Source: Fimbriosthenelais zetlandica (taxonomy: Eukaryota). Taken from it: a stretch of 64,000 bases of DNA. Of this stretch, positions 1 through 59,000 are shown piece by piece. The notes below the pieces were generated by a model. That model did not search any database, was not told the origin of the DNA, and worked only from the letters and a program-made list of their open reading frames with translations. The stretch spans positions 20,646,001 through 20,710,000 of the forward strand of contig OZ365110.1 of the NCBI GenBank assembly GCA_977030845.1, in the 5' to 3' direction. Numbering within the stretch: the stretch's first letter is position 1; each line of letters begins with the position of its first letter. A program made the position numbers and the translations under genes.

Positions 1-728
1 TGGTGAACTTGATCTGGTTTCAGTATAAACCCAATGACCTCCACAGTGCTTTCACTGATTGTCACTGGGCGAGAGTTATTATGTCGGGTCTGTTTGATCA
101 GTGATAGACATCTTAGAGAGCTGTCAGACAATGTGTCATATCTACAGGCATTATGTTAGAACACATCATGCTCCCGACTTGATCGACTGCGTACCATTGT
201 AATGAATTATTGTATGTGATAAGGGGCATGTAAGCAAAGAATGACACTCTCAGCAATATACGCCCGCATGACAGGCGCTGCATTGGGATTGCACTGTTTT
301 CATGCACTTATGCATAGTCTGATACATATTTTACCTTGTTTCCATGAGGTATATTATCCATGGGTATATCACAAATGCTCCCATATATAATTATATTCAC
401 ATGGATGCAATAAAATGCACACGATGGCAAATAATTAATATCTTTCTCTCTGATATCGCCCCGTCGGATGAATATAAATAATAATATTCATTATGTATAG
501 GGCTAGTTTGGACCTATTCCCTCCATTTATCATTGACTTTCCCTGCATTTTCTTTTGGTTATGTATTGTCATAATTCTGAGGGCATTTGTTAACATATTT
601 CCATTTTAGAAAAGTCCAATTGCCTGAAGATGAAGGTAGCCCCTAACTAGATCACAACTGGTTGATCATGGAAAGGTGGCCTAGTTTGTCTGGGGACTGG
701 TAGAGGGCGGCAGTGTAGCGGTAGTGGT

Positions 729-768
729 GGCGCCACTGTGCCGGCGCTACTGTGGTGGCGCTAGTAGG
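729..768 (+). repeat. short degenerate tandem repeat, period 14
   Basis: ggcgccactgtgcc / ggcgctactgtggt / ggcgctagtagg; GGCGC starts at 729, 743 and 757. Confidence 0.6.
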
Positions 769-1899
769 AGGTGCTTGCAAGCAGACGCTTCATTGTCATT
801 CCCCTCACAGTCAGCCTTTGAAGGCTTCAGTCCTGCAAACAGGTCGTGGCGCAGTGTCCTTTTAGTTTAGCATGCGCTTCTTCTCAACACCGCTCCTTTC
901 ACTGCCCCATCTTTATACTTCAAGGTAGGATACTTCTTCATATTCATTGAATATCACCAAACTAATCAGCACTCTCTTGCTCCCGGGTTTCCCTTTTCTG
1001 GGTGGGGACGATTCCCGGCTGCTTACTGCTGGTCTTGGCTCATTGTTCGCAGTGGCTTGCTTCTGTTCCCTTCCTTGATTTTAAGGTCAACCTTGGATTT
1101 TACCTCTTTATTTGATCCCCAAGCTCCTGGTCCATCTCTCATATCATCGGTTTATCATGGAGGCCGAGGATAGGGTGATTTAAGGGCTGGTTTTGGGATG
1201 AAAATCGGTATTACTGTGGTTGGGAAATGGTCACGATTGTGCATCACTGCTGGGTGCTGTAAGAGAGGTGTGCATGGTGGCTGGGTGGAGAGAGACAGCT
1301 GCCCCTGTGTGAGTATATACAGGTTGGAGAGATGCTATTGTTTGTGAGCGCGACTCGCGATTGTTATCTCAAGTCCTTCAATTGACTTTTATGCCTCGTA
1401 TCTATTAAGGGCAGGTGTTGGACATTCAAAGACTCGGCCTTGAGTGGCTGCCGTTTTTACACCCCAACCTTTAGTTAACCTCAGTTCGACCTGAACATTT
1501 AAATGATAGACATCTCGATCTCATGGCCTTTCAATTGATTTGTTGGTGATAACGATTTGATTTCGGTTTGATTTGCCATGATTTCGCTGACCTTTATTTA
1601 ATTTTATGGACTTCTGCTTGACCCCAATAAAGGGTCAGCTTTTTTCGTAGAAAATACTCGTGGTATAGTTTTTCACAATCAAGTTTGAGATATATAGATT
1701 TCTCGCCGGGGAAAATCATTTTTGTTCACATGTTCCTAGTATACCACCATTGGATATATTTTATCTCTATATTATGGCGCACGGCCGTGTATATATCTCT
1801 CGGCAAATGACAAGAAAGTTGCTTGTGCTCCCTTCACCGGAAACAAGGAAGATTATTTTTGCCCCCAACTCGAGTTTCGCCCATTATTTGTAAACCGCT

Positions 1900-2330
1900 G
1901 AGCCAGGCATTGTTTGACGGTCAGAAACTCTCGGCTCAAGCACCACCAAGCTGTCGGGGTTGGCTAGAAAGGGAGGTGGAGGTAGAGGGGGGCGGGAGAG
2001 AGAAGGGGGGTTGAGGGGGCTTTTGGTGTTGTCTGAAAGCAGCGTGGCCATAATAGAGGACTGACAATGGTCGCTGTCGACCCCCCTCCTCCACCTCCTC
2101 CCCCCATCCTCCTCCTCTTCCTCCCGCGCTCTCTGTAGTGATTGATATTTTCGGTGTAGGGCGGGTGGGGGGAAGGCTGGCTTGCTCACAATACTACCCC
2201 CACAACCACCCTGCAACTTGCGCAGGAGCTGAGGGAGGAGGAGGAGGAGGAGTAGAAGGGAGGCTGGCTGGTGGATGGATGCTGCTAGTGGGTGAACTTA
2301 CACTGTAGTAGTACAGCCTACACAGCCATT
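1900..2330. promoter_or_regulatory. GC/CpG-rich, purine/pyrimidine-biased promoter or 5' leader-like region
   Basis: Much higher GC than the flanks, G-runs at 1968-2020, (CCT)n and (GGA)n tracts, immediately upstream of the first strong + strand donor. Confidence 0.4.
2085..2251. repeat. imperfect (CCT)n (2085-2123) and (GGA)n (2236-2251) microsatellites
   Basis: Direct reading: cccctcctccacctcctc...cctcctcctcttcctccc; ggaggaggaggaggag. Confidence 0.8.
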
Positions 2331-2388
2331 GCCGCTTCAGCATCGCTACTGGCTAGTCCTGTTTGTGCTGCTCCTTCTCCCTTTCCTC

Positions 2389-2416
2389 TACTACTACTAC
2401 AACAACCTCTACTACT
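2389..2416 (+). repeat. (CTA)n/(CAA)n microsatellite
   Basis: ctactactactacaacaacctctactact. Confidence 0.8.
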
Positions 2417-2593
2417 GGCGCTACCAGTGAGCACTTCAACTGTGAGCCAGCAGCCAGCCAGCACGCAACCATTGCATCCAACAACGCCAGTTTCCCCCTC
2501 ACTACCTCACCATTGGCCTGCCCAACAGCCAGCCCCATCACTGCCATCTCCAGCCTCGGCTTGCCTCCCTCTTTCTCTGTGTCTCTCTCCCAG

Positions 2594-2680
2594 TTAGTTT
2601 CTAATCTGTGTTGGTTCAACAGCATCCTTACCATTACCAGACGCGTGCCTCTGGGTCCATTTTAAAGCTGGAAAAAAGAG
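2594..2680 (+). ncRNA. candidate non-coding exon of the mir-184 host transcript (may be the 3' part of a longer first exon)
   Basis: Pyrimidine tract ...ctctgtgtctctctcccag acceptor at 2593 and consensus donor GAG|GTAAGT at 2681. All three frames contain stops. Confidence 0.5.
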
Positions 2681-3476
2681 GTAAGTCATTGTGGGTGAAC
2701 TAAACACGCACCACACTTGCTCATCCTGTCTCCCTCTCAAACACGCGCTTTCTACCCGAACACACGGCCATCCACAGTGATGGACCGGTTCTAAAGCTAA
2801 ACAGAAAGAATCAATCAGTATTGGACTACAGTAATATGACCACTCGGCTATTAATACGTGGACGTGCGTAGTCCAAATAGAACACTTCTTGTTCATTGGA
2901 TGAAGCCATCATATTGACTTTCCAATGCTTCTGAAAGACAGTGGTCTGAACTGGGAACATTATAAGGAAACCTGTTGAACTAAGTGTACATATACAACCT
3001 CACTATTCCTCTGTATTTCAAATGACGCTTCGACCAGCAAACTCTTCTTTAAATTCCCCGTGAAATTTGTAGAGCTTGGATTGCATTGAGAGTGAGAGAA
3101 AGCAATACCACCGCCTCACCATGTTTTAGTCATTCTTCTGTTGGTTTTATTTTTACCGTGCCCGTGTGCTTTCAAGTGCTGTCCTCGTTTAAAAATAGTG
3201 ATCCATTTCCAGGTTAAGATTGTGTAACATGCCATTTGTGTGTGGGTGAGTGTGTGACTGTGTGTGGCTGATTTGACCTCATAACACCTGGCTAGGCGCG
3301 GGGGCGGGAGAAGAGAGAAAGGGGGCAGGCCAGTGAATCCCAACACCGCCTAGTATAGAAACCATTGCTTTTCGCAAATGGCCAGCTTTTACTCAATCTT
3401 TCTCCCTATTAGTGTGCATTTCACCCCCAGACAATTCACGCTTTTATTCACAAGCACTGCTTATTGTATTTTCCAG

Positions 3477-3957
3477 GTGAACTGACTGACAGTTGCACTG
3501 GGGAGAGAGTTGTTGGAAGGAAGCTTATCCAAGAAGCAACCGATGCCTTGATGCTGAAGGACAGACAGTTAGAATGCCTCTGGCGGCAAGAGCAGTAACT
3601 AACTCACGGATGCGGCAAGGGAAAGCTGGAACAACAGTCAGAGGAGGGAGAAAGGGACATTTTGACAGGAGGCGCAAGACAGTGTTGGTGGAGCTACCAA
3701 CGAGTCAAAAGCTGGTGTTAAAGTTTTTTGGCAGCAGAGGCTCAGCTTACCTTAAATTTGACATCTAACGCGACTGGCCGGGTTAAAAGACACCAGTGAC
3801 TCGCTATGTGGTGAGATCAGGCCCAGCCTGGATACATATAAAGATGGCAAGCCTTCCTCACTCCATGGGCATTCCTCCAGTGGTCATCCACACTGATACA
3901 TCTCCAGGTCTCCTCCAGTAACCCAGCACCTCAACTTACATCATTATACTACAACTG
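3477..3957 (+). ncRNA. candidate second exon of the mir-184 host transcript
   Basis: Acceptor ttattgtattttccag| at 3476 and donor CTG|GTATGC at 3958. Only short ORFs inside. Confidence 0.45.
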
Positions 3958-5081
3958 GTATGCACCTTCTCCACCATTCACACACATACAACACAAGGTG
4001 ACTATTATATACACACATATCCAACACTGGAGATCTTGTATATATTATATCTATGTCCTCTGCATTTCCGAAGGGAAGTGAAACTGGTGTTGAAAAGAAT
4101 CTGGAAATATTTCTATGTAGGATTGTTAGTAGAGAGATCTGTGAATCAAGCCTCAGATGGATACAGACTTGTGGTCTTTTTTTCCTCGCAGGGAGATGAA
4201 GATGAAACAAGAGTTCATACATGTCATGTAATACCGAGCAGAAAGCATTGAGTAGGGAAGATTTGAAACCATGGAAAACCTGAGGATACCCTCCTTATTT
4301 GGAACTGTGATACAAGCATAGTATTTCTGCAGGGCTCCAGATCTATTAGCTATTGTAGTAGCATCGACATGTCTTAAATATAGGCTGAATATTTGCTATA
4401 TTAGACGTAGAAAGTATCTCTGCAGGTGCGATTTCACTGCTTGATTGTATTATTTTGTTTTGAATTTCTTTAGTGCTTGCTCTCTTGATGCTATCTGCTG
4501 CTTTTGGTGGTAAAAATTCTCAGAATTTCATCTTTTCTGTCTCTATCACGGCTAGGTCCTTTTGTTTGCTCTCTTTCCTGAGTGCAGACAGGAGGAGAGA
4601 CACAGGTAAAGGGATTTCATTTGAGTAACCTAGTTGTCCGCTTAGTCACGCTTAGTACGGCTGAGTGCCGCCAGAGGTGCCTAGTGGCGTGTGGGGAGTT
4701 ATTAAGGGGGAAGCCATAGTGCTTGGAGTCGACCTCAGTGTATTCCTATACGTAACGCTTTTAGTACAAAGCACCTGGCCCGTGTTACCTTAGCACCTTC
4801 TGCGTTGCATTGAACAATGGGGCAGGCAGTGCCCTTTTGAACTCTTCTTTCTACTGAGATTTTCCTTGGCATTAACTCCTCAAATATTATTCATTAAAAA
4901 GGAATTATTCGGTATTTCGAGATTTTTAAACGTTTTTTATGACAGAAAGAGACTACATATGAGGCCAATACACGTACAAGGAGAGCGGACGGACATAGTT
5001 GGATTTACTTTACCTCCTGTGATAGGGCAACGTTGGATTCAGCCGATGAAAGAAGAGGATACTCATTCATTTACCACGTTT

Positions 5082-5141
5082 CCTTAGCACTTCGTCGTCC
5101 AGTTTAATATTTGAATTATTGGACGGAGAACTGATAAGGGC
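5082..5141 (+). ncRNA. mir-184: microRNA mir-184 precursor hairpin (mature 3p arm 5120-5141; star arm about 5082-5103)
   Basis: 5120-5141 reads TGGACGGAGAACTGATAAGGGC, identical to mature miR-184 as I recall it for invertebrates (human ends GGGT). Upstream arm CCTTAGCACTTCGTCGTCCAGT pairs with it across a 16-nt AT-rich loop (5104-5119). Flanks ACCACGTTT / GCGTGTGGT extend the stem. Confidence 0.95.
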
Positions 5142-5332
5142 GTGTGGTTAAATGGACTCTGCCATAAACTTGTAAAACTACTTTGACATCTGAGCACCAG
5201 GCCCGCCTAGAACACCATGTATAAAAGGAACGAGTTGATCTTTCCAGCTTTAATGCTGCCCTCATTTTGCTCATAGAAGCGTTCTTTTTCCAATCTTTAT
5301 ATTGGTTGTAATTATAAATGTTTCATTGTCAG

Positions 5333-5430
5333 GTGTGCAATATAAGGTATAGTTCAAACTGATAAGGAACATTGCAGTCAGTGATAAAGGGAAGTACAGT
5401 ATCAATAAACCTTACCTGATGACTGATAAG
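5333..5430 (+). ncRNA. candidate terminal exon of the mir-184 host transcript
   Basis: Acceptor tttcattgtcag| at 5332 followed by AATAAA at 5404-5409. The 3' end is approximate. Confidence 0.25.
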
Positions 5431-8400
5431 CGAGTCATACCACAGTACAGCAATTATCTGTGTGAGGAAATACAGAAAAGCTGATCTATAAACCATCACC
5501 CTTACATATTGTATAATAGGTGAGTTCTGTGGTAAACGTATTGTTGTCTAGGTCAGTGCTGAATCAGCTACAACATGGTTTTGTAAGTCAAACATACAAT
5601 CCTTCTGATAAATATGCTTAATCAGAAATAATTGTGACAATAATCGAGATCGTATTGTTCAAAATAACAGATGGAAGCATCCGCTTGCCATTGCTTTACA
5701 AACAGGTAAAGTTGACCTCAGAAAATCTTTTATTCCAGGAATAGTAATTAGGGGCATAGACAACTGGAAACGGTGTGACAGTCTGCAAGCAATAGAGTAC
5801 ATTACCCAAGTATGCAGATTGCAAATGACTATACACACAGCTGCGAGTTCCCAATTCTATCCCCAAACCCAACACGTTTTGTCTCTGCGAAGGGGCCTGG
5901 GTGTCTGGTACCATTTGCGGGGCCATAGTGATGCTTTATTACTACCGGGTGATGGGCGAGAGGGTCAGGGAACAAAGCCTTTTGTACTGGTGCAGTCAAT
6001 GGAGCCCAAATCCGTAGGCAGATGTCAGTGGAATGATGTGTCGGTGATTTATTCCTGTGAATGGCTACTTGGAGTGATTTGCTAGCGTCCCGTCGAGCGG
6101 CGCTGGCTCTCCCAGGACAGTTTGGGATGGGTCCCGCCCTGGCTAAAGGTCAATAAACGATTGGTAATTTGTTATCTTTTTTTTCTGGGAACGTAAGCCT
6201 ATCCACCGGGAATAGGTATATTCGACACGGCTAGATATTTTTTGGCTTTTTATTCCTTGTGTATAATTAGTTAATTTTGGATACCAAAGCTTTCCCCTTC
6301 GCTAAAGTGGGATGTAATACTAGAGGCCTTTTGGATGGGTTCAGATTGTATAAAAGGGTTTGCCTTGACATTATATAAGAATATCTGACGGTAAGTATCT
6401 GGACTCATGCTGGTTTTCATCGCCTCAAGAAATGGGAGCTTTGACGGGATTAAACCATCTCCCCGTGAGTCTTGAGGTCTCGGCCATTGTTGTGCGGCCA
6501 GGTAGCTACATCTGCTAACAGCAGGAGAGAGGGAGGGAAGAGAGGGGAGTCTGGCAGATGGGTAGCCCCAGGGCTACTATCCAACCAGTTAACGGGACTT
6601 GGCTGGGCTAGGTTTGACAAGGTGTCGAAACAAACTGCCCCCTCCACCTCAAGGCGTCTTACCTCCACAACACTCTCATTTACTCACCTCCACCTGTCCC
6701 CTCCAAGTTTTTCATTATTTTCAAAATCCCACTTAAAGTATGGTATTGACTGTCAAAAAGCCCCTATATATAATATAACTGCAGTATGCTCCTTTCATTG
6801 GTACTGAAATCGTGAGTCTGATTTTGGACTTGACTGAGATATTCCATGTGAAGGAATTTTTCTTATTTTTTCCTCATTTTGGTTGACCTGTAAAGCCCTT
6901 TCATGCATTCCTACATCCTACCTACACCTGGCCTTTCTTGGCGTTGTCGCTAGGAAACGCCTCCCCATTCCTTACCCTCAACTCTTTTATGTTCTACCTC
7001 TTGCTCGCCCCCGACCACCTGGCACATCCGAGATGTCCCCCTTTCCCCCATCAGAACTTCAGTTCCCATTTAATCACCTATTGCCTCCAGTATAGCGGAC
7101 CCACTCAGACTACATGGTCTTCATCTGTCATAAGAATTACACCCTTGGCAAGCGCCCTTCAACCTCCCTCCCCTAGGAGCCTGATCGTTCCAGGTGGTAC
7201 AAACATTGACAGGTGCGATCCTATGGCACGCGCCCAATTACAGACATTTATCCCAGCTTCTACATGACTAGCAGCCAATACAGTCTGAACTGACGCGCTG
7301 GGGTAAAAGAGGAGGATTAGCATTGTTTGTACTAGTTATTCCAAGGGGCAATCCCAGTCCATTCCCCTATGGGATCAAGCTAAGCTTTTGAGGCTCCCGC
7401 GTCCATGTCAGCAAGAGCGTGACCTCAACTTCCGGTAATGAAATGCTAGACCGTGTCATTGACAGTATTCTCAGTTTTTCCCCACCATTTCCCTCTCATT
7501 GTCTTCTTGAAATCTCCCTCCCTATTGCTGAAGTAACGAGCGATTCCCTTATGAAATCGCAGACAATAAAATGAAACGAGGAAAAAGCATATACAAATCC
7601 TTTCGTTTCTCGTATTATCGCCCATGCCTGAGTTGAGTCATGTGTGATTTCAATCGGTTCGCGTTACTCACCTTATCTGAAGCAGGGCATTTAGCACGAT
7701 GTGGAGGCATTTAGATCCATATCTCCCATGGTAATTATGCGGCTCAATGTAGCTGGATTTTGCTATAGGATGGCTATTGTCCTGCCGTGATTGTCGTTGG
7801 TGGGAGGGACAGATGTGGCCTCTTGAAAATCCCGCCGAGTCTCGCGCCACCAGCGCGACTGCCTCTCCCCGGCTAAGCTTGGGTTTCAACGCATTTAGTC
7901 CGGGCCATATGTCAGTGTAAACCAAGCCGGTCAGAGCGGTTGTTTTGCTACTGTTAATCATCGGTTTAGCCTCGAATGCTTATTACATGGCATCGTTTGG
8001 CACCGTGGGAGCGCGGCTAAACCATAAGCTGTCACGTCCTGTCACCCTACCTGGTCGCATTACATTAATTTATAGCTGTCACCCTCTGTACTTACCAGCT
8101 AATAATCTCATGGTCATTGGAGCCTGCTCGATAACTGTAAAATATTGAAACAGTCCTGGGTTAGTGCTGAATAAAGATTGATACACCTCCATTATACATT
8201 GGTAATTCGAAACAATAACAGTAGAAAGGGTACATAGAACCAAGAACGCTGTAAATCTCGCTCAATGCCCTTGGTCCTTCAATTACAACAGTTAATATAT
8301 GAAATTTAATATGACTGTGGCTTTTTAAAAAAAGAAAAAAGTTTGTTTTCTAGTAGGCTTACATTTGCAGGCCGTTATACAACAATGCTTTACCCTGTGG

Positions 8401-8654
8401 TTGTACAATGCCTGCAGATAATACTGGTTGGGAATAAATACTTCGATCTTGAGTCAGACTTGAGGCCTATAAATAGCCTAGGCCTATGCATCCTTTAATC
8501 TCCCTTTTACATGGCCGGCAAATAAATTGAACCTGCATAGTCAATTCTATTAACATTTTCCAATTATTGATTAATTGTGATGCAATAACAACATAATTTG
8601 TTTTAATACAACTATTTGGAAAACTCGACAGCATTCTGATCAATTCCACGGAGA

Positions 8655-9130
8655 ACAGGCAGATTCCAATGATATTTCCATAACAAGATTATCTTCAAGA
8701 CATGGATGGCTAGGATGGAATGGAAGATAAAATGATAATCTCTGTTGAAAGCAAAACCCGCGTATTTTTCACTCATTTAGGAGGAAACCAGTACCTTCTT
8801 TGTACTACAGCAAAACGTATACTTTATTCTAATCACCAAAAACGATGTGTCAAGCCATTCCTTTTTTATTCCGGAGGACTATGTTCCAAAGAAAAGAAAC
8901 AAATTCAATTATGTGGATTATACTTTTTCATATTCCAACAAATGACTTCTTTCTAATCATTGTATCTACGATAAAGGCTTTCTGTAACATGTGTCTATCC
9001 AACACTGACTGTTTTGCAGGCAGGTGTCATTCTCCTTTCTTGGATGCAGCTACGATCAGAGTTCACGATAATTGATCTCTATACAACAGCTATACCTTCT
9101 ACCCAGGAGACAGGGGGATACATACATGAT
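8655..9130 (+). mobile_element. decayed PIF/Harbinger (ISL2EU-like) transposase fragment
   Basis: Collinear motifs across frames with stops: GRFQ*..KIIFKTW (cf. YRF..SRIF.TW), TRVFF (cf. RVIIDCTE), LYSNHQKRCVKPFL (cf. TYSNYK..NT.KFL), YDKGF at 8967-8981 (cf. ADKGF). Confidence 0.4.
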
Positions 9131-12100
9131 ACCTGCCCCCTTTTGGTCCTTAGAAGGCCTTCATCCTCTCCATTGTGTATCTACAGTCAATCATAAGCCA
9201 CACTGTTGGCAGCCCATATGCTTCTTAATGCCAACCACCTGAGCTTGGGAAGAGAGGAGGCAAAAAAGTGCCCAGGCTTTGAGGAGACCAATCCAATCAC
9301 TCTGGGTCTCTTCTTGTGTACAACACGCACTTGTCATAGATCAGGGGGAAGACTCTGGTTGCTGGGCCGGGGTCGAGTGGACTGTTTAGGCAGCTTGATA
9401 TGATGCTGATGCTTAGTTCCCATCAATCAAACAAGCATGACCCGAGTAGCTCTCTCAAAATCACCACCAGGCCCCTCTGCCTCTTTATTCATCTGCTGGC
9501 CTTTAAGGGGCTGTCTGAAGCAGTAAGGTGGCTAGTCAGGGGGCATCCATACAACAGGAATCCGAACTGGAGAAGTAACAATGAAAAGTAACGACGGGAA
9601 GTTTGAAAACTTAAAAATTCTATATATGCAGTCCTTTAGTTCTGGACAATAAGTTTGGAGAGACAGAATGCAGAGTTTTGTGAAGCGAGACAATAATGAG
9701 ACTGAGCAAATAGGATGTTGCTTTTGTATTTCAAAGTTCATTCTCTTAAATGAATTCTGAAGTATTGTGTTGAATTTAGAGAATTAATTCATTTGGGCAT
9801 GAATTCATGTTAGGGATATAGGACCTACTGCTCAATAGAAATTCATAATACCCCTGGCCAAAACTCCATGGGGCAAGACAGACCGGATTAAAAGTATCTG
9901 TTAAGATCGGGAATAATGTTTCTTGTATAATGTCATGCATTGTTTGGAGGCTCCATGTTATTGACACAATACTCTTGCTTTTACAACAGAGTACACGTGG
10001 ATTTTAAGCCCAAACCAGTTGCAACCCCTTGATACACAGTACTCTGAAAAAAAGAGCTGAAAAAAGAGCTTATGGAAATCAATCCATTTGTCCAGTTCCC
10101 AAAATATTTTAATCTTCTTGGCGTCTCACTTCCCGACGGCAGGATACATTTAATTGGGGCGGACGGTAAAAGGAAAAAGAATTGGGTGGAATTTGGCCGA
10201 CATTATCCATAAAAAAATGGTTTAAAAATATCAACTTAAAATTGCTTCATGAATGAAGAACGATGGTGCGGAGTGAAAATTTATGGACCAGTCAACAAAG
10301 TTGGCGCTAATCATGATTGGTCACCAATATCATGTCACTTGATTGGGTCACATGCTTCCCCCATCTCGGGCCGTTATCAAGGGTGGATGAGAAATCAAGC
10401 GACTTTTACACTATGGGCGAGATGCGAGGCGACAGAGCGATTGTCGCCGACAGGATGAAGAAAAGCCAGGCCATGATGTTTGCTCGTCCATCATGCCGTC
10501 TTGGATGCGACCTCATTAAGTGTGTATTGAACAGTTATCATCACCTCAGAATGTGGCCTTGGAAAAAGCTTTGTTCCGCCTTGATCAGTCAATCTCTTTG
10601 GTAATTCATTCCAGGAAATTCAAAACTCCATTAAGTAGTGGTATGAAAAATTCAAGTAGCAGCCAATTTTTTTCTTCGATTAAAAGTTTTGAAGGGAATT
10701 GATTTGTTTTTGATTGGCTTTCGCTGATGACCTTAAATCTTTTGAGCTCCAATTTTCCATGGCTTACTTGACCCCAAGAAAATCAGTAAATTTGAGCGAT
10801 TTTTCCCTCGTTTTACACTAATGATTTGGGCCATGTACTAGTGATATAATTTCCACCTATATTTATCTATTCCTCAAGTGCAAGCCCCTCATCCCATGAA
10901 TGAATGTTGGTACTTCAGATACGGACTGCTAGAGAATCTGCTGAGCTACTCCTACCCTTGAGAACATGTTTCTCTTCACAAGGGAAATAGGTCAGAACAG
11001 CTCCTGGTTCCATGACTACTTTAATACGTTCTAATTCCAATCACTAATTAACTGAAAATGATGCTTCATTCATCCTCATTGTCATGAATTCTCAAGCAAG
11101 AGTGTGATAAATACCCATAAGTATTAATGCCCGCGAAATTTTAGGTCCGGATTATACCCATAACAAACAATAATTGCAACACTAGATAATGTTCTAGATT
11201 ACAGATTCAAGAACTATGTCATCTTTAGGTATTTCGTTTAAAATCTGGAAGACAATTGACCAAAGTCTTCTGTTATAAATAGAATTGATTGATTCGATGA
11301 TCAATTGGAAATGATTTTCAGCCAATTCCACAGGTGGAACACTTTTTAATTCTGATGAAAGGAGCGAAAACACTCGCTAAAGGATTGCATAATTGAGAAA
11401 GAACATGAATGTTTTAAGTTCGTTCCCGTTTCTAAATGGGGAATTAGGAAGTTGGTTTTCATATTGATTTTCTGACTAAATGTGCCAGAAAAAGGAGGGT
11501 GAAAATGGAATAATCGACAGACTTAAAGGAAGTTGATGCGTTGATAATCTGTGAAAATTATCTCAAGATTTCCTTTCTGTTTAATGAAGATGACCTTAAT
11601 TTGGGGCATGCTGAATTTAAAAGAGGGAAAAACATCCTCAAGAAGATATTCCGAGTATGGACATGGAATATTGGGAGCTCAGGAAGGTCCAGAAACTAGC
11701 TAATTCTAACAACCATTTCCCATGGATACATCGTTCGCAATTCCTTCTTACACATCCTTCTTCCTTCATCCTGTCTGAAGCTATATTTGATAATAGGATA
11801 TACTGTCATAATCTCCCACCTGACAGGCCTCGAAAGTCAAGAAGACTTTTGAAATTCGAAAAGTTTATAATTTAGTTGTCTTTCCCTCGAAGGGATCGAG
11901 GATTTCACTTCTAAAGCTATGACTTTGGATAGAGGGCAATTACATTTATACGCCATAATCCCCAACTCTGAGCCCCGAGAGTTCCCTGAAGAAAAACGTA
12001 GAACGCTTCCATTTTTCCATGCTCCACATTGCCCGGACCCACAGGAGAGGCGGACTCATCGCCGAAGCCAGAGTTAATTAAATAAAAATGGTCATTCGTC

Positions 12101-12620: not shown

Positions 12621-14299
12621 GGATCTTTGTTGGAACGTCTGAATGCCTCAGCATGGTATACATCCTAGGCCTGTGCGGACCACCACTCTCCATGGTAGGC
12701 TACAGGAGGGGATGAATTAGGAGCAGACTGAATTGACCTTTACCTGAATGGGTCGCCACGACAGGTTTATATAGAATGTCCAATATAACCGACAGAGACG
12801 TGCTCATCGTGATTTATCTTAAGCCTTCGACACACTATGTTATTGTTTTCCTTCCTTATTACAGTAGTTGACCATTCATAGTCAGTGTTATGTAATTACA
12901 TAGCTAAACAACGTGTACGACCAAAATTAGGCAATTCATTCATTCTTCCTCGTACAAAGGCCTTATCATCAATTAAGTGTTCTGCTCTTGATATACAGGT
13001 TAATGTCTATTTATAAGTGATAAAATTAAATCCCGAGTTTAGTCATCCGCTTCTGCACACAAAGGGCTATGCTATAGGTATTTTTCTTCTATATATAGGA
13101 GACAGGTAAAATGGGGATGAGGAAGATAGCGATTGTTCTTATTATTAGATTATCTGGAGGTAGTGCCTTCAATCATACCCACAACATCAAAGGTTCTTAA
13201 AGTGTCGTATTAGCTGGAGATAAACGGGCTTTTATCATAGTAAAGTTTATATTTATACATCACAATTCGAATTACGTCGAAGACTATACCATTACCAACA
13301 TACCAAGATTTTATCCGTCCATACTCAAGCTTCCCAGGTTCTTACATACTCATTATGATAGACATGATCGTTCGTAATTTAAAAAGGACATTCATTGACC
13401 TATTTTCACCCATATTATATGCTCAGCTAGTTATTTCTTTTAAATCCTCACAGGAAGCAATCTGCGAACACCGCCTCCCAAGTTTTCTAGTCATGTTCCA
13501 AAGACAGCGGCGGTAGAATACATGTTGTAAGTACAATTCCCTTGATGTCTAGCTAGCTCACACAGGGACTACTTCTTAGGGCGGACGTACTTCTTCTTGC
13601 ATGGAGGATCCAGCGATCCCGGAGGTTTAAACCAATACCCAGGGGGTTAGGTCTATTCGGGTCAGTCCCTATAAGAGACTTATCAGCCAGTGACCATGTG
13701 ACATTCCGGAATTACAAGCCCAGTTCGGATAGAGTGCGCATGCGTGATAAGCACACGTTATGTAACATTGCTGGTTATACATATCACCCGTCCATAACAT
13801 ATAGAGGCGCTAATATTAATCCTTACAATATGAATTCATCCCATTTAGTCCTAGTTCTATGATTATATTTTAGATTGAAACGATGTATTAAACGATGTGT
13901 AAAAAAGGGGTAATATTTCTTAATTAATACTTAATAATAATCATGTGTTGCATGTATCCATTGTATGATTGACATGAGCCAATTAAGTAAGTCATATGTA
14001 TAAGCCAATGAAGCTGCTTTAGCAGTCCACAGAGCTTAGATTTACATTAATTGGCTGATGTAAAATTTCCATTACACAATTATTAATGAACATTACCATG
14101 TCCCACCTGTGCTTGCCTTTGTGTGAGAACAGGAAGTGAAGTACAGGGAAAAATTGTGCCAGAGTGAAAACACGTAAGAGGATGAAATTTAATACCAAAC
14201 CACCAAGAACTATTTGGCATTTCTACAACTTTTAGTAAACAAATATTGTAAGTAATAAAAGACAAGTTTGTGGTCTTTCTACGATGGAAGGTGGAAGCC

Positions 14300-22971: not shown

Positions 22972-56051
<33,080 letters not shown>

Positions 56052-59000
56052 CTGTTTCAAATATAGTACGCCATTAAAATGTGTATAGATGAAGCTATCA
56101 ACATTTAAAAGGCCAGATATCAATGAGTTATGGATTAAACAGTTTATTTTTGACAAAAAGTGTGATGGGGAGGCAAGTATGAAAAACGAAATGACATTTT
56201 GAGACGCACATGAATACACATTTAAAATTGCACATCAATATTATTTTCCCAGTGAAAGTTCAAAAAACACATTACTTCAAAGTATGACCCTTCATGGGAA
56301 CATAACTGGATCACCCTAAGCTAAGGAGGACACTTATAATCTGAAGCCAGCGAACGGAAACTTCTCCTGATATTTTTTTGGGCAGCCATACCTTCTCCTG
56401 TATGAACAAAACTTCATTTATTGCTTTCATTGCGACCAAAATATTTAAGAGATTAAATTATTTTTAAGAGAAGTTTCTACAAGTAAAACTGAGTGAAGTA
56501 ATGGAGGATCGTTAAAGTGACCTTAAATTCTAAGTAGGTCTTTTCTCTGGGAGATGTGGGCCTATAGGGGGAATTACCTCCACAAGTGAAGCCACGTGGA
56601 AGTAAAGTCAAGGAATTAAGTTTTGGTTGCGATAGCTTTTCAGTCCTGCCTTTAATCACAGGAATATGATTGAAAATACATCAGAGACCATTTTGCTCTG
56701 TAAAAGTCAGCAAAAAAGTAATTATTGCGATCCAAATGGCCTCCCAACTGACCAATAGTAGTGACCTGTAGGCCTGGTCAAGATATCCCATGGGAGGACC
56801 TTTCGTTTACTTATTATAGTCGCTAGGGCGAGTAAAGCCCACCGCTGAGCGGTCTATGATTTCATCACGACCATCTAACTAGGTTCATACTTTCATCTCG
56901 AGCGTCTTGGACGTAACGTCTAGATTTCCCAACGGTCGGTGTAATTTCTTGGATCTCCCTTCAGGGCCTCGCTATAGCTAGGCGGTCGGAGTGAAGACGT
57001 ACTACCAATCAGGGGCTCCCGCTCCCCAGGGCCAGTCCTACAACAGAGCTGGAGCACATTAGCATAGGCCACCATTATTCTTCGGCCTTTCAGGTGTCAC
57101 GCTACTGATTTGTTGTGACAGAGATACCTCTGTCGCTGAGAGCACCACTTTAATTAGACGGAGGCTGGGTTTTGCCAGTTAAGACTGTAGTGACCCCTGA
57201 GCGGTAAAGGTAACCATGTTAGTCGGAGGCTTATCAGTGTTAATTTACCCAGCGACATGGCCAGATCGCGAGGAGGAAGGAGGGGAGGGTGGGATCTTAG
57301 AAGTGACAACAACAGAATGGCTTTTATCTCGTGTCCAAGTGAAGGCCGAGTACAAGATTAAGTCGCTTAGACTCTGTCACGACTGGCTTTCTTATTTCCT
57401 ACTCTTACAAAGATCAATACGAAAGGTTGTCCATAAATTAGTGCATGGAAACCAGCGATTATCTACATTTACTTAGCTATATTATAATACATTATGTTTA
57501 ACTAATGGATGTTTATTGGCTTAAATTAAATTTCAAACATCTTCCCTTAAAGTCTGCAAAACATGGTCAGGTAACATTCCCACCAACCACCTGCAGCTCA
57601 ACAGGCAAAAGAGCAGTCCACGAAGTGGCATAGGGAGTGCAATATTATCTATTTGATATTTATGTATGGCAAGTACAAAGACTGGAATCCCTGTCAAGGG
57701 AAGGGGTAGCAATAGGGAAGCTAACATTGCCAGCGAGGAGTGCCTTGAAGCTTCAGATAGAGTGGGCCCTAGGGAATGGGGCTAAATTGCCAGCCCTGCA
57801 GCCAACAGGCTGTAGGCCCGTCCCCCTACCGCCAGGTAATGTCCCTAGGCAACTTGTTTCATTCTTAAGACGCCACCAGCTCCTGCTGAGTTGCTCAGTG
57901 GTGGCTTGGTGAGCTGCTCCCCCGTAGGGCCACAGAGACAGGGCCTTCTCCCCCTTCTCCTCCTCTTACCACCTGCCACCACTAGTACACACCCCATTTC
58001 AGGCCACCACCACCACCACCCACTACCCTGTGCCTGCCTCCAACCCAGCCAATGGCCTTAATCGCATCAGATTTAATGCAATTTCCCGCCAAATGGAGAT
58101 CAAGCGGTGGTAGGGTGTCATGGATGATCTTGGGTTATTGTGATCATTTTGACACCGGATCAGAGGCGCTCATCTGCGCCAAGACGAAGAAAGGCGAGCT
58201 AATTAAGTCAGTAAAGTTTCCAAGGATCCAGATGGGCAAGCTACTCGTTTTCACGGTGCAAGACCCTGCCAAATGGAAACCGACAGACTCTCCTATTGAA
58301 GGAGACCAATGCAACTCCGTTGACTGGTAACTTCCAGTCTATCAATGAATAATAAATTAAATTATGCTTCAATTAATTAGTCTACATTTTGAATAAATTT
58401 GTCTACAATTTCCTTTTCGTGCATTTTGCAGCCCAGTTAATTCACGTATGATTTCCACATACATGTACTTAGTTGCACATTGCATCCTTAATATTATGGC
58501 GATCATCTATTTTTCCAACCATGATAAGAATCGCGTATGGGAGGATAAAAAGTGAAATAAAAGCACATACATACAATATGGAATGATGACGGATGTTTTG
58601 CTGCCTACAACCATTTATTGGTAAAAACGCAGAAACAAGTAAGCAAACCAAATCCAAACAGTAAAGGAAGCCAATGGCAAGAGAGTTTTGTCATAGGCAG
58701 GAATGGGAAACAAGGTGATATATCCAAACACATGACATTATATGCCACTCATTATGGACACTGGTCTGCCGCTGAGAGATCAATATGAGCAGTATATATA
58801 TACGACTGACCATCAACAAGGCAGTGTATAGCTTCACCATGCAATGCCTACCAAAGGCACAAACCACTCTTCCTGATCGGCTTTTGATAGCAACACGTCT
58901 GGGTGTTCTCTTTTTATACATTCCTCTCGGCTTGGTCCTGACAAACGAGAATAAAATGAAATTATGATATTAGAGAGGAAAGCTCCGTGAACGGGGACAT

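What the first reader, a model, noticed from the sequence alone, without database searches (positions are those of the whole stretch)
5072..5162. Intact mir-184 hairpin that the ORF track cannot show
Seen: an exact 22-nt miR-184 mature sequence on the 3p arm, a complementary star arm, an extended basal stem and a CNNC (CTGC) at 5159-5162, 18 nt past the predicted 3' end. Known: miR-184 is an ancient bilaterian miRNA, and CNNC about 16-18 nt downstream aids Drosha processing. This is the most clearly functional element in the left third of the window. It is a known family rather than a novelty.
Basis: partly seen in the sequence, partly recalled or inferred. Interest (0 to 1): 0.75.

Follow-up and report, generated by a model that had tools for sequence, protein, structure and literature searches.

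The report
Ordinary conserved mir-184 microRNA gene
This is an intact, single-copy gene for miR-184, one of the old microRNAs shared by nearly all bilaterian animals; it has the expected anatomy and is a routine annotation, not a discovery.

Summary
Rfam's mir-184 model matches window 5070-5151 (+) at 62.8 bits (cut-off 54.1). It is the only Rfam family above cut-off in the 64 kb. The 22-nt miR-184-3p lies at 5120-5141 with no mismatch. It is the only real copy in the 447-Mb genome. The hairpin folds at -34.9 kcal/mol (z -4.3). It has 17 pairs between the arms, a 14-nt loop and a long lower stem. The structure predicts a 5p star at 5082-5103 with 2-nt overhangs at both ends. CTGC sits at 5159-5162, 18 nt past the 3p end.

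I recovered 72 distinct mir-184 hairpins from animal DNA in public metagenomes. The window's hairpin fits them:
- 93% of the cells of the consensus structure pair, against 34-44% in slid controls.
- The lower stem shows many compensatory changes.
- CNNC lies at +16 to +18 in 37 of 39 non-redundant hairpins, against about 13% by chance.
- Similarity to these contigs stops at the hairpin's edges.

Expression could not be tested, because no sequencing run was listed for this genome. The basal UG and apical UGUG motifs are absent. Verdict: a real, canonical mir-184 orthologue of a known family, of low interest.

The parts
5070..5151 (+). Match to the Rfam mir-184 precursor model (RF00657), full model length 1-86
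   Evidence: 62.8 bits against a gathering score of 54.1, E = 2.8e-11. The minus strand scores only 36.2 bits.
5066..5081 (+). Lower (basal) stem, 5' strand. C5077 is the conserved C at -5 of the predicted 5' Drosha cut.
   Evidence: Pair table. Column 22 of A1 is C in 63 of 73 hairpins. Compensatory changes occur in columns 18-24 with 100-106.
5082..5103 (+). Predicted miR-184-5p (star strand), 22 nt, starting CCUUA
   Evidence: Follows from 2-nt overhangs on the pair table. The 5p products reported for whitefly and chicken also start CCUUAUCA. CCTT and CA are invariant in A1.
5104..5119 (+). Segment removed by Dicer: a 14-nt unpaired loop (5104-5117) plus two paired bases (5118-5119)
   Evidence: This is the least conserved part of alignment A1.
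5120..5141 (+). Mature miR-184-3p (guide), with seed GGACGGA at 5121-5127
   Evidence: Exact match and the only one in the window. It is the only exact copy in the genome. It is identical to published miR-184-3p. The seed is listed for the bilaterian mir-184 family in PMC4326209.
5142..5156 (+). Lower stem, 3' strand, with GUG at 5144-5146 (the GHG / CmR position, +3 to +5 of the 3' cut) and a bulged U at 5148
   Evidence: G at +3 occurs in 68 of 73 hairpins and G at +5 in 66 of 73. Motif definition from PMC11701709.
5159..5162 (+). CNNC motif (CTGC), with its first C at +18 from the 3p end, 3 nt beyond the end of the stem
   Evidence: Sequence. CNNC lies at +16 to +18 in 37 of 39 non-redundant family hairpins, against 4.7% per position in the window.
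5404..5409 (+). AATAAA, a possible poly(A) signal of the primary transcript (weak, inferred only)
   Evidence: AATAAA occurs 8 times in the first 12 kb, so one within about 300 nt downstream is not unusual. There are no transcript data.

Best explanation
Window 5066-5162 (+) is the genome's single, canonical mir-184 microRNA gene.

Inferred mechanism, by homology with the standard animal pathway:
- A Pol II primary transcript folds into the 38-position stem with a 14-nt loop.
- The Microprocessor (Drosha with its partner protein) cuts between 5081/5082 and 5141/5142. It is helped by the conserved C(-5)/G(+3)/G(+5) context, by the C.C mismatch opposite guide position 12, and by the CNNC in the single-stranded 3' flank.
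- This releases a 60-nt pre-miRNA, 5082-5141.
- Dicer cuts at 5103/5104 and 5119/5120, giving a duplex with 2-nt 3' overhangs.
- Argonaute keeps the 3p strand (5120-5141). That strand starts with U at the weaker U-A end, whereas the 5p strand starts with C in a C-G/C-G end.
- The guide represses mRNAs that carry sites complementary to the seed GGACGGA (UCCGUCC, with or without a following A).

Shown here: the sequence, the fold, family membership, single-copy status, pairing conserved across the family, and the conserved flank motif. Inferred: transcription, the exact cleavage sites, strand choice and targets.
For: - Rfam RF00657 scores 62.8 bits (cut-off 54.1), and it is the only family above cut-off in 64 kb.
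- The 22-mer is exact at 5120-5141, with 0 of 100 shuffles matching.
- The locus is single copy. The covariance model finds only this place in 447 Mb.
- The two 3-mismatch pattern hits, L003 and L004, equal the reversed-pattern control in number. They do not fold better than shuffles (z +0.3 and +0.5) and have no Rfam match.
- MFE is -34.9 kcal/mol with z -4.27. The sense strand folds better than the antisense (-37.8 against -30.8 kcal/mol), because six G.U pairs exist only on the + strand.
- In family alignment A1 (73 distinct hairpins), 93.4% of the cells of the consensus structure pair, against 34-44% when partners are slid. There are 115 cells with changes on both sides against 22-45, and the covariation score is 0.295 against at most 0.117. 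Four of five measures were reached by 0 of 500 shuffles and the fifth by 1.
- CNNC lies at +16 to +18 in 37 of 39 non-redundant hairpins.
- BLAST of window 1-12000 against all these contigs matches only 5066-5148, an island of conservation the size of the hairpin.
- 5p products starting CCUUAUCA are reported in whitefly and chicken, which fits a cut before 5082.
- mir-184 is described as a bilaterian family with seed GGACGGA.
Against: - There is no expression evidence. No sequencing run was listed for this genome, either around the hairpin or on a WD40 exon. The 5' end at 5120 and the star reads therefore remain predictions.
- Three of the six processing motifs described in PMC11701709 are missing: the basal UG, the apical UGUG and the bulged GWG.
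- The -6/+4 position is an A-U pair here, not a mismatch.
- The lower stem has 14 pairs beyond the 3p end, against a family median of about 8. This could shift the Drosha cut.
- G5087 is unique among the 73 hairpins and makes a G.A mismatch opposite guide position 15.
- The comparison set was chosen by an exact 21-nt match to the mature strand. Conservation of that arm is therefore by construction, and only the 5p arm, the lower stem and the flanks are independent.
Confidence: 0.93

Rival explanations
1. The hairpin is conserved in sequence but silent in this species. It would be a recently inactivated copy or a locus without a working promoter.
For: No transcript or small-RNA data could be obtained. 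No promoter was identified. The basal UG and apical UGUG motifs are absent.
Against: It is the only copy in the genome, and it belongs to a family kept in most bilaterians. The mature strand, the 5p arm, the lower-stem pairing, the GHG context and the CNNC are all intact. A dead copy would be expected to have accumulated changes, as its flanks have.
Confidence: 0.03
2. The functional product comes from the minus strand. An antisense transcript would be processed into different small RNAs, either instead of or alongside miR-184.
For: The reverse complement also folds into a hairpin (-30.8 kcal/mol, z -3.5). It scores 36.2 bits with the mir-184 model.
Against: The score is below the gathering score of 54.1. 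Six G.U pairs become A.C mismatches on the minus strand. The CNNC and the GHG context are on the + strand only. The invariant 22-mer reads as miR-184 only on the + strand.
Confidence: 0.02
3. It is not a canonical microRNA gene. It would be a chance hairpin, a transposon-derived inverted repeat, a mirtron, or foreign DNA in the assembly.
For: Genomes contain many hairpins, and a lone CNNC is expected by chance about 13% of the time.
Against: - By my own arithmetic, an exact 22-mer is expected about 5e-5 times in 447 Mb on both strands, and none appeared in the shuffles.
- No direct or inverted repeat family occurs in window 1-12000, and the locus is single copy.
- The predicted pre-miRNA starts CC and ends GC, not GU...AG, so it is not a mirtron.
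- The locus lies inside a 57-Mb contig.
Confidence: 0.01

Closest known systems
mir-184 family (Rfam RF00657; called MIR-184 in MirGeneDB), e.g. snail bgl-miR-184-3p and insect miR-184-3p
   Same: The 22-nt mature strand is identical, with seed GGACGGA, and lies on the 3p arm. The 5p arm starts CCUUA. The pre-miRNA is about 60 nt (family mode 62-63). G at +3 and +5 and CNNC at +16 to +18 are conserved.
   Different: G replaces the usual U at 5087 (unique among 73 hairpins), giving a G.A mismatch opposite guide position 15. U replaces the usual C just before the mature strand. The lower stem is longer and A/U-rich. The loop sequence is unrelated.
Metagenome contigs L106 and L098 (JAAUXW010004612.1, JAAUXT010071469.1), the nearest hairpins found
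   Same: They are 82% and 79% identical over 79-82 nt, including the CCACGUUUCCUUA lower stem and 5p start. Both pass the Rfam cut-off, at 65.6 and 57.7 bits.
   Different: There is no detectable similarity outside the hairpin. The source organisms of these contigs are unknown to me.
Vertebrate mir-184 (mature strand ending in U)
   Same: The seed and the first 21 nt are the same, as are the arm and the overall hairpin. L063 carries the U-ending type.
   Different: The last base here is C, the variant printed for insects, ticks, molluscs, echinoderms and some fish. The 5p arm's distal half differs: CGUCGUCCAGU here, against UUUCCAGCCCAGC in L063 and L107.

Membership tests
mir-184 (Rfam RF00657) | Covariance-model score at or above the curated gathering score | tested here: met
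   62.8 bits against 54.1, covering the full model 1-86. The same result came from the whole-genome search.
mir-184 (Rfam RF00657) | Seed GGACGGA and family-level identity of the mature strand | tested here: met
   22 of 22 bases are identical to published miR-184-3p. The seed is as listed in PMC4326209.
mir-184 (Rfam RF00657) | Mature strand on the 3p arm, with a 5p arm starting CCUUA | tested here: met
   Pair table, alignment A1, and reported 5p products.
Canonical animal microRNA (MirGeneDB-style structural criteria; recalled from my own knowledge of Fromm et al. 2015) | At least 16 complementary positions between the two arms, and a loop of at least 8 nt | tested here: met
   17 pairs between 5082-5101 and 5120-5139, and a 14-nt loop.
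Canonical animal microRNA (MirGeneDB-style structural criteria; recalled from my own knowledge of Fromm et al. 2015) | 2-nt 3' overhangs at both the Drosha and the Dicer cut | tested here: inconclusive
   The structure allows exactly this, with 5082-5103 and 5120-5141. The cuts themselves are inferred from orthologues, not from reads.
Canonical animal microRNA (MirGeneDB-style structural criteria; recalled from my own knowledge of Fromm et al. 2015) | Small-RNA reads from both arms, with a homogeneous 5' end on the mature strand | not testable with these tools
   No run was listed for this genome in either search, so read laying could not be used.
Canonical animal microRNA | Hairpin pairing maintained in evolution by compensatory changes, with conservation confined to the hairpin | tested here: met
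   93.4% of cells paired against 34-44% when slid. Nine pairs have changes on both sides, and the covariation score is 0.295 against at most 0.117. BLAST similarity covers only 5066-5148.
Microprocessor-licensing motifs (PMC11701709) | CNNC in the 3' single-stranded flank | tested here: met
   CTGC at +18. The family shows it in 37 of 39 hairpins at +16 to +18.
Microprocessor-licensing motifs (PMC11701709) | CmR/GHG context: C at -5, a purine at +5, and a mismatch between -6 and +4 | tested here: inconclusive
   C5077 and G5146 are present and conserved across the family. However, -6/+4 is an A-U pair here. It is mismatched in 23 of the 73 hairpins.
Microprocessor-licensing motifs (PMC11701709) | Basal UG, apical UGUG and bulged GWG | tested here: not met
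   There is no UG at 5060-5079. The loop starts UUAA. The bulged U5148 lies at +7 and is not flanked by G on both sides. These motifs are helpful but not required for family membership.
Mirtron | Hairpin ends coincide with the splice donor GU and acceptor AG | tested here: not met
   5082-5083 is CC and 5140-5141 is GC.

The most novel reading that the evidence does not exclude
This orthologue may be processed differently from the family norm. Its unusually long A/U-rich lower stem, its paired -6/+4 position and its unique G.A mismatch opposite guide position 15 could shift the Drosha cut or the balance between the arms. The species would then make a 5p product or a 3'-shifted isomiR in appreciable amounts. 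Separately, the near-universal CNNC at +16 to +18 (37 of 39 hairpins) suggests that mir-184 depends on the CNNC-reading factor unusually strictly across phyla.
Probability: 0.07. Interest if true: 0.25.

Novelty: already known. Interest (0 to 1): 0.1.

Why it matters
The locus matters mainly for annotation. ORF-based gene finding misses it, and it should be recorded as the species' single mir-184 gene. Its seed, GGACGGA, can then be used to predict targets. The family comparison made on the way may be of modest use to people who study microRNA processing. It gives 72 hairpins from uncultured animal DNA, with CNNC and the GHG context almost invariant. It does not change what is known.

Tried and rejected
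- Expression. The look-up of sequencing runs returned no listed run, either for window 4600-5600 (kind any) or for a WD40 exon at 55728-56234 (kind rna). Read laying was therefore not used. This is a blank, not evidence of silence.
- Paralogues. The two 3-mismatch pattern hits elsewhere in the genome (L003, L004) were rejected. Their number equals the reversed-pattern control. They do not fold better than shuffles, and Rfam finds nothing in them.
- Clustered partner microRNAs. A permissive Rfam scan of the whole window gave only mir-184 on its two strands, plus one far-below-threshold Hsp83 3'UTR match that I take as chance.
- Protein-coding host. Ten ORFs within about 4 kb have no Pfam match.
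- Repeat or transposon origin. No repeats were found in window 1-12000.
- Primary transcript. I looked only for hexamers. AATAAA at 5404 is compatible with a transcript end about 265 nt downstream, but it is not significant. I did not evaluate the separate note on a spliced host gene at 1900-5430 beyond this.
- Organism. It was not identified. Earlier notes call the genome annelid-like, and I did not test that.
- Literature. A search for an annelid-specific miR-184 report was badly framed and gave nothing usable.

Full report
**What is there.** I read window 4950-5290 directly.
- It is the only match in the window within three mismatches, and none of 100 dinucleotide-preserving shuffles produced one.
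- The same 22-mer is printed as miR-184 or miR-184-3p in 23 papers covering mosquitoes, ticks, mites, silkworm, a snail, sea urchin, sea cucumber and fish.
- I checked one of these directly: bgl-miR-184-3p of Biomphalaria, an abundant intergenic microRNA.
- Rfam's mir-184 covariance model (RF00657) matches 5070-5151 (+) over its full length at 62.8 bits, against a gathering score of 54.1. It is the only family above cut-off in the 64 kb.
- A permissive scan added only the same hairpin read on the minus strand (36.2 bits) and one chance-level hit.

**Anatomy.**
- Window 5060-5165 folds at -34.9 kcal/mol (z = -4.27), and 0 of 200 shuffles fold as well.
- In the pair table, 5082-5103 pairs with 5118-5139. 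Of these pairs, 17 lie between the two predicted products.
- The terminal loop is 14 nt (5104-5117).
- The lower stem is 5066-5081 with 5140-5156: 15 pairs, one U.C mismatch at 5080/5141, and one bulged U at 5148.
- The 5p arm starts CCUUA. The 5p products reported for whitefly and chicken also start CCUUAUCA. This supports a Drosha cut before 5082 by homology.
- The guide starts with U at a U-A end, and the star starts with C at a C-G/C-G end. Loading of the 3p strand is therefore expected. This is an inference from the standard asymmetry rule.
- Six G.U pairs exist only on the + strand. The antisense strand folds less well (-30.8 against -37.8 kcal/mol).
- The hairpin is not a mirtron, because its ends are CC and GC.

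**Copy number.** The window lies on a 57-Mb contig of a 447-Mb genome.
- The covariance model finds only this locus.
- A pattern search allowing three mismatches finds two other places. Their number equals the reversed-pattern control.
- Neither of those places folds better than shuffles, and neither has any Rfam match.
- mir-184 is therefore single copy here.

**Comparative test.** No related animal genome can be reached with these tools. I therefore scanned public metagenome contigs for the first 21 nt of the mature strand.
- The scan found 104 contigs, evidently animal DNA within metagenomes.
- Of these, 72 distinct hairpins with a recognisable 5p arm within 50 nt were aligned with the window, giving alignment A1.
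- The mature arm is fixed by how the set was chosen. Only the 5p arm, the lower stem and the flanks carry independent information.
- RNAalifold returns the expected hairpin.
- On that structure 93.4% of cells form standard pairs, against 34-44% when the 3' partners are slid by 1-3 columns.
- There are 115 cells with changes on both sides, against 22-45 in the slid controls.
- The covariation score is 0.295, against at most 0.117. Four of the five measures were reached by 0 of 500 shuffles and the fifth by 1.
- The seven lower-stem pairs (columns 18-24 with 100-106) carry most of the compensatory changes. One pair, for example, is UA in 23 sequences, CG in 19 and AU in 12.
- The window's hairpin obeys this structure throughout.
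- BLAST of window 1-12000 against all the contigs matches only 5066-5148. This is the hairpin-sized island of conservation expected of a microRNA gene.

**Processing motifs.**
On its own it is weak evidence, because CNNC occurs at 4.7% of positions in the window. That gives about 13.5% for at least one in a 3-position target.
- The family comparison makes it meaningful. After removing near-duplicates, 37 of 39 hairpins have CNNC starting at +16, +17 or +18. The frequencies are 51% at +17 and 33% at +18, against a few per cent at most other offsets.
- In the window the motif lies 3 nt beyond the last stem pair, in the single-stranded flank. PMC11701709 describes it there and links it to SRSF3 and SRSF7.
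- That paper defines six motifs and argues that they date to the bilaterian ancestor. The window scores as follows:
  - CNNC is present.
  - A mismatch at guide positions 10-12 is present (C5131 opposite C5090).
  - The C(-5) and G(+5) parts of the CmR/GHG motif are present. They are conserved across the family: C in 63 of 73 hairpins, and G at +3 and +5 in 68 and 66 of 73.
  - The -6/+4 mismatch is absent, because that position is an A-U pair here.
  - The basal UG, the apical UGUG and the bulged GWG are absent.

**Peculiarities of this copy.**
- G5087 is unique among the 73 hairpins; 69 have U and 3 have C. It turns a U-A pair opposite guide position 15 into a G.A mismatch.
- The base before the mature strand is U, not the usual C.
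- The lower stem has 14 pairs beyond the 3p end. This is longer than in most family members, whose median is about 8.
- None of these features breaks a family criterion. They are the only basis for the small-probability reading that processing differs here.

**Surroundings.**
- Ten ORFs within about 4 kb have no Pfam match.
- No repeats occur in window 1-12000.
- AATAAA lies at 5404, but this is not significant.
- At least four WD40-like exon ORFs lie on the minus strand between 39 and 56 kb. This gene is convergent with mir-184, and I see no link between the two.
- I did not evaluate the separate note on a spliced host gene beyond these points.

**What could not be done.** Both searches for sequencing runs returned no listed run. 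Expression, the 5' end at 5120 and the star reads remain untested. This is a gap in the evidence, not evidence against the gene.

**Comparison with what is known, and verdict.**
- mir-184 is described as a bilaterian family with seed GGACGGA. It is broadly expressed in amphioxus, flies and vertebrates.
- This locus meets every sequence and structure criterion for the family that I could test. It differs only in minor, lineage-specific details.
- It is a known microRNA in its expected form.
- Novelty is nil and interest is low.
- The organism was not identified here. Earlier notes of this scan call it annelid-like, and I did not test that.

Noticed in passing
A1 (window 5058-5171 plus 72 metagenome hairpins, L005-L108): Across diverse mir-184 hairpins, CNNC starts at +16 to +18 in 37 of 39 non-redundant sequences. 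C(-5), G(+3) and G(+5) around the Drosha cuts are 86-93% conserved. The family keeps these licensing motifs almost without exception.
   Followed up: yes
L006, L009, L022 and similar, against L007, L008, L018 and similar (contig series Ga0056xxx, Ga0126xxx, Ga0209xxx): Two clearly different mir-184 hairpin types recur in the same series of metagenome samples. This suggests two paralogues in those host animals, whereas this genome has one copy.
   Followed up: partly
L100:215-513 (-): Two mir-184 hairpins lie 185 bp apart on the same strand of one 1-kb contig, which looks like a tandem duplication.
   Followed up: no
L014, L026, L075, L053, L060, L076, L094, L078: In these contigs no 5p-arm motif was found within the 62 nt upstream of the mature strand (in L014, L026, L075 the 5p arm's end lies some 50-70 nt upstream). 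These look like mir-184 precursors with very long loops, or otherwise divergent ones.
   Followed up: no
window 39369-56234 (-): At least four WD40-repeat-like exon ORFs lie at 39369-39641, 40608-40847, 46717-47094 and 55728-56234. The last has a sub-threshold Pfam WD40 match (23.9 bits against a cut-off of 27, E 5.8e-5). They point to a large WD-repeat gene convergent with mir-184.
   Followed up: partly
window 13314-13321 (+): There is one perfect 8mer site for miR-184 (TCCGTCCA) about 8 kb downstream on the same strand. Whether it lies in a transcript is unknown, and a single 8mer in 64 kb is near chance.
   Followed up: no
window 5087: G at this position is unique among the 73 aligned hairpins (U in 69). 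It creates a G.A mismatch opposite guide position 15.
   Followed up: partly
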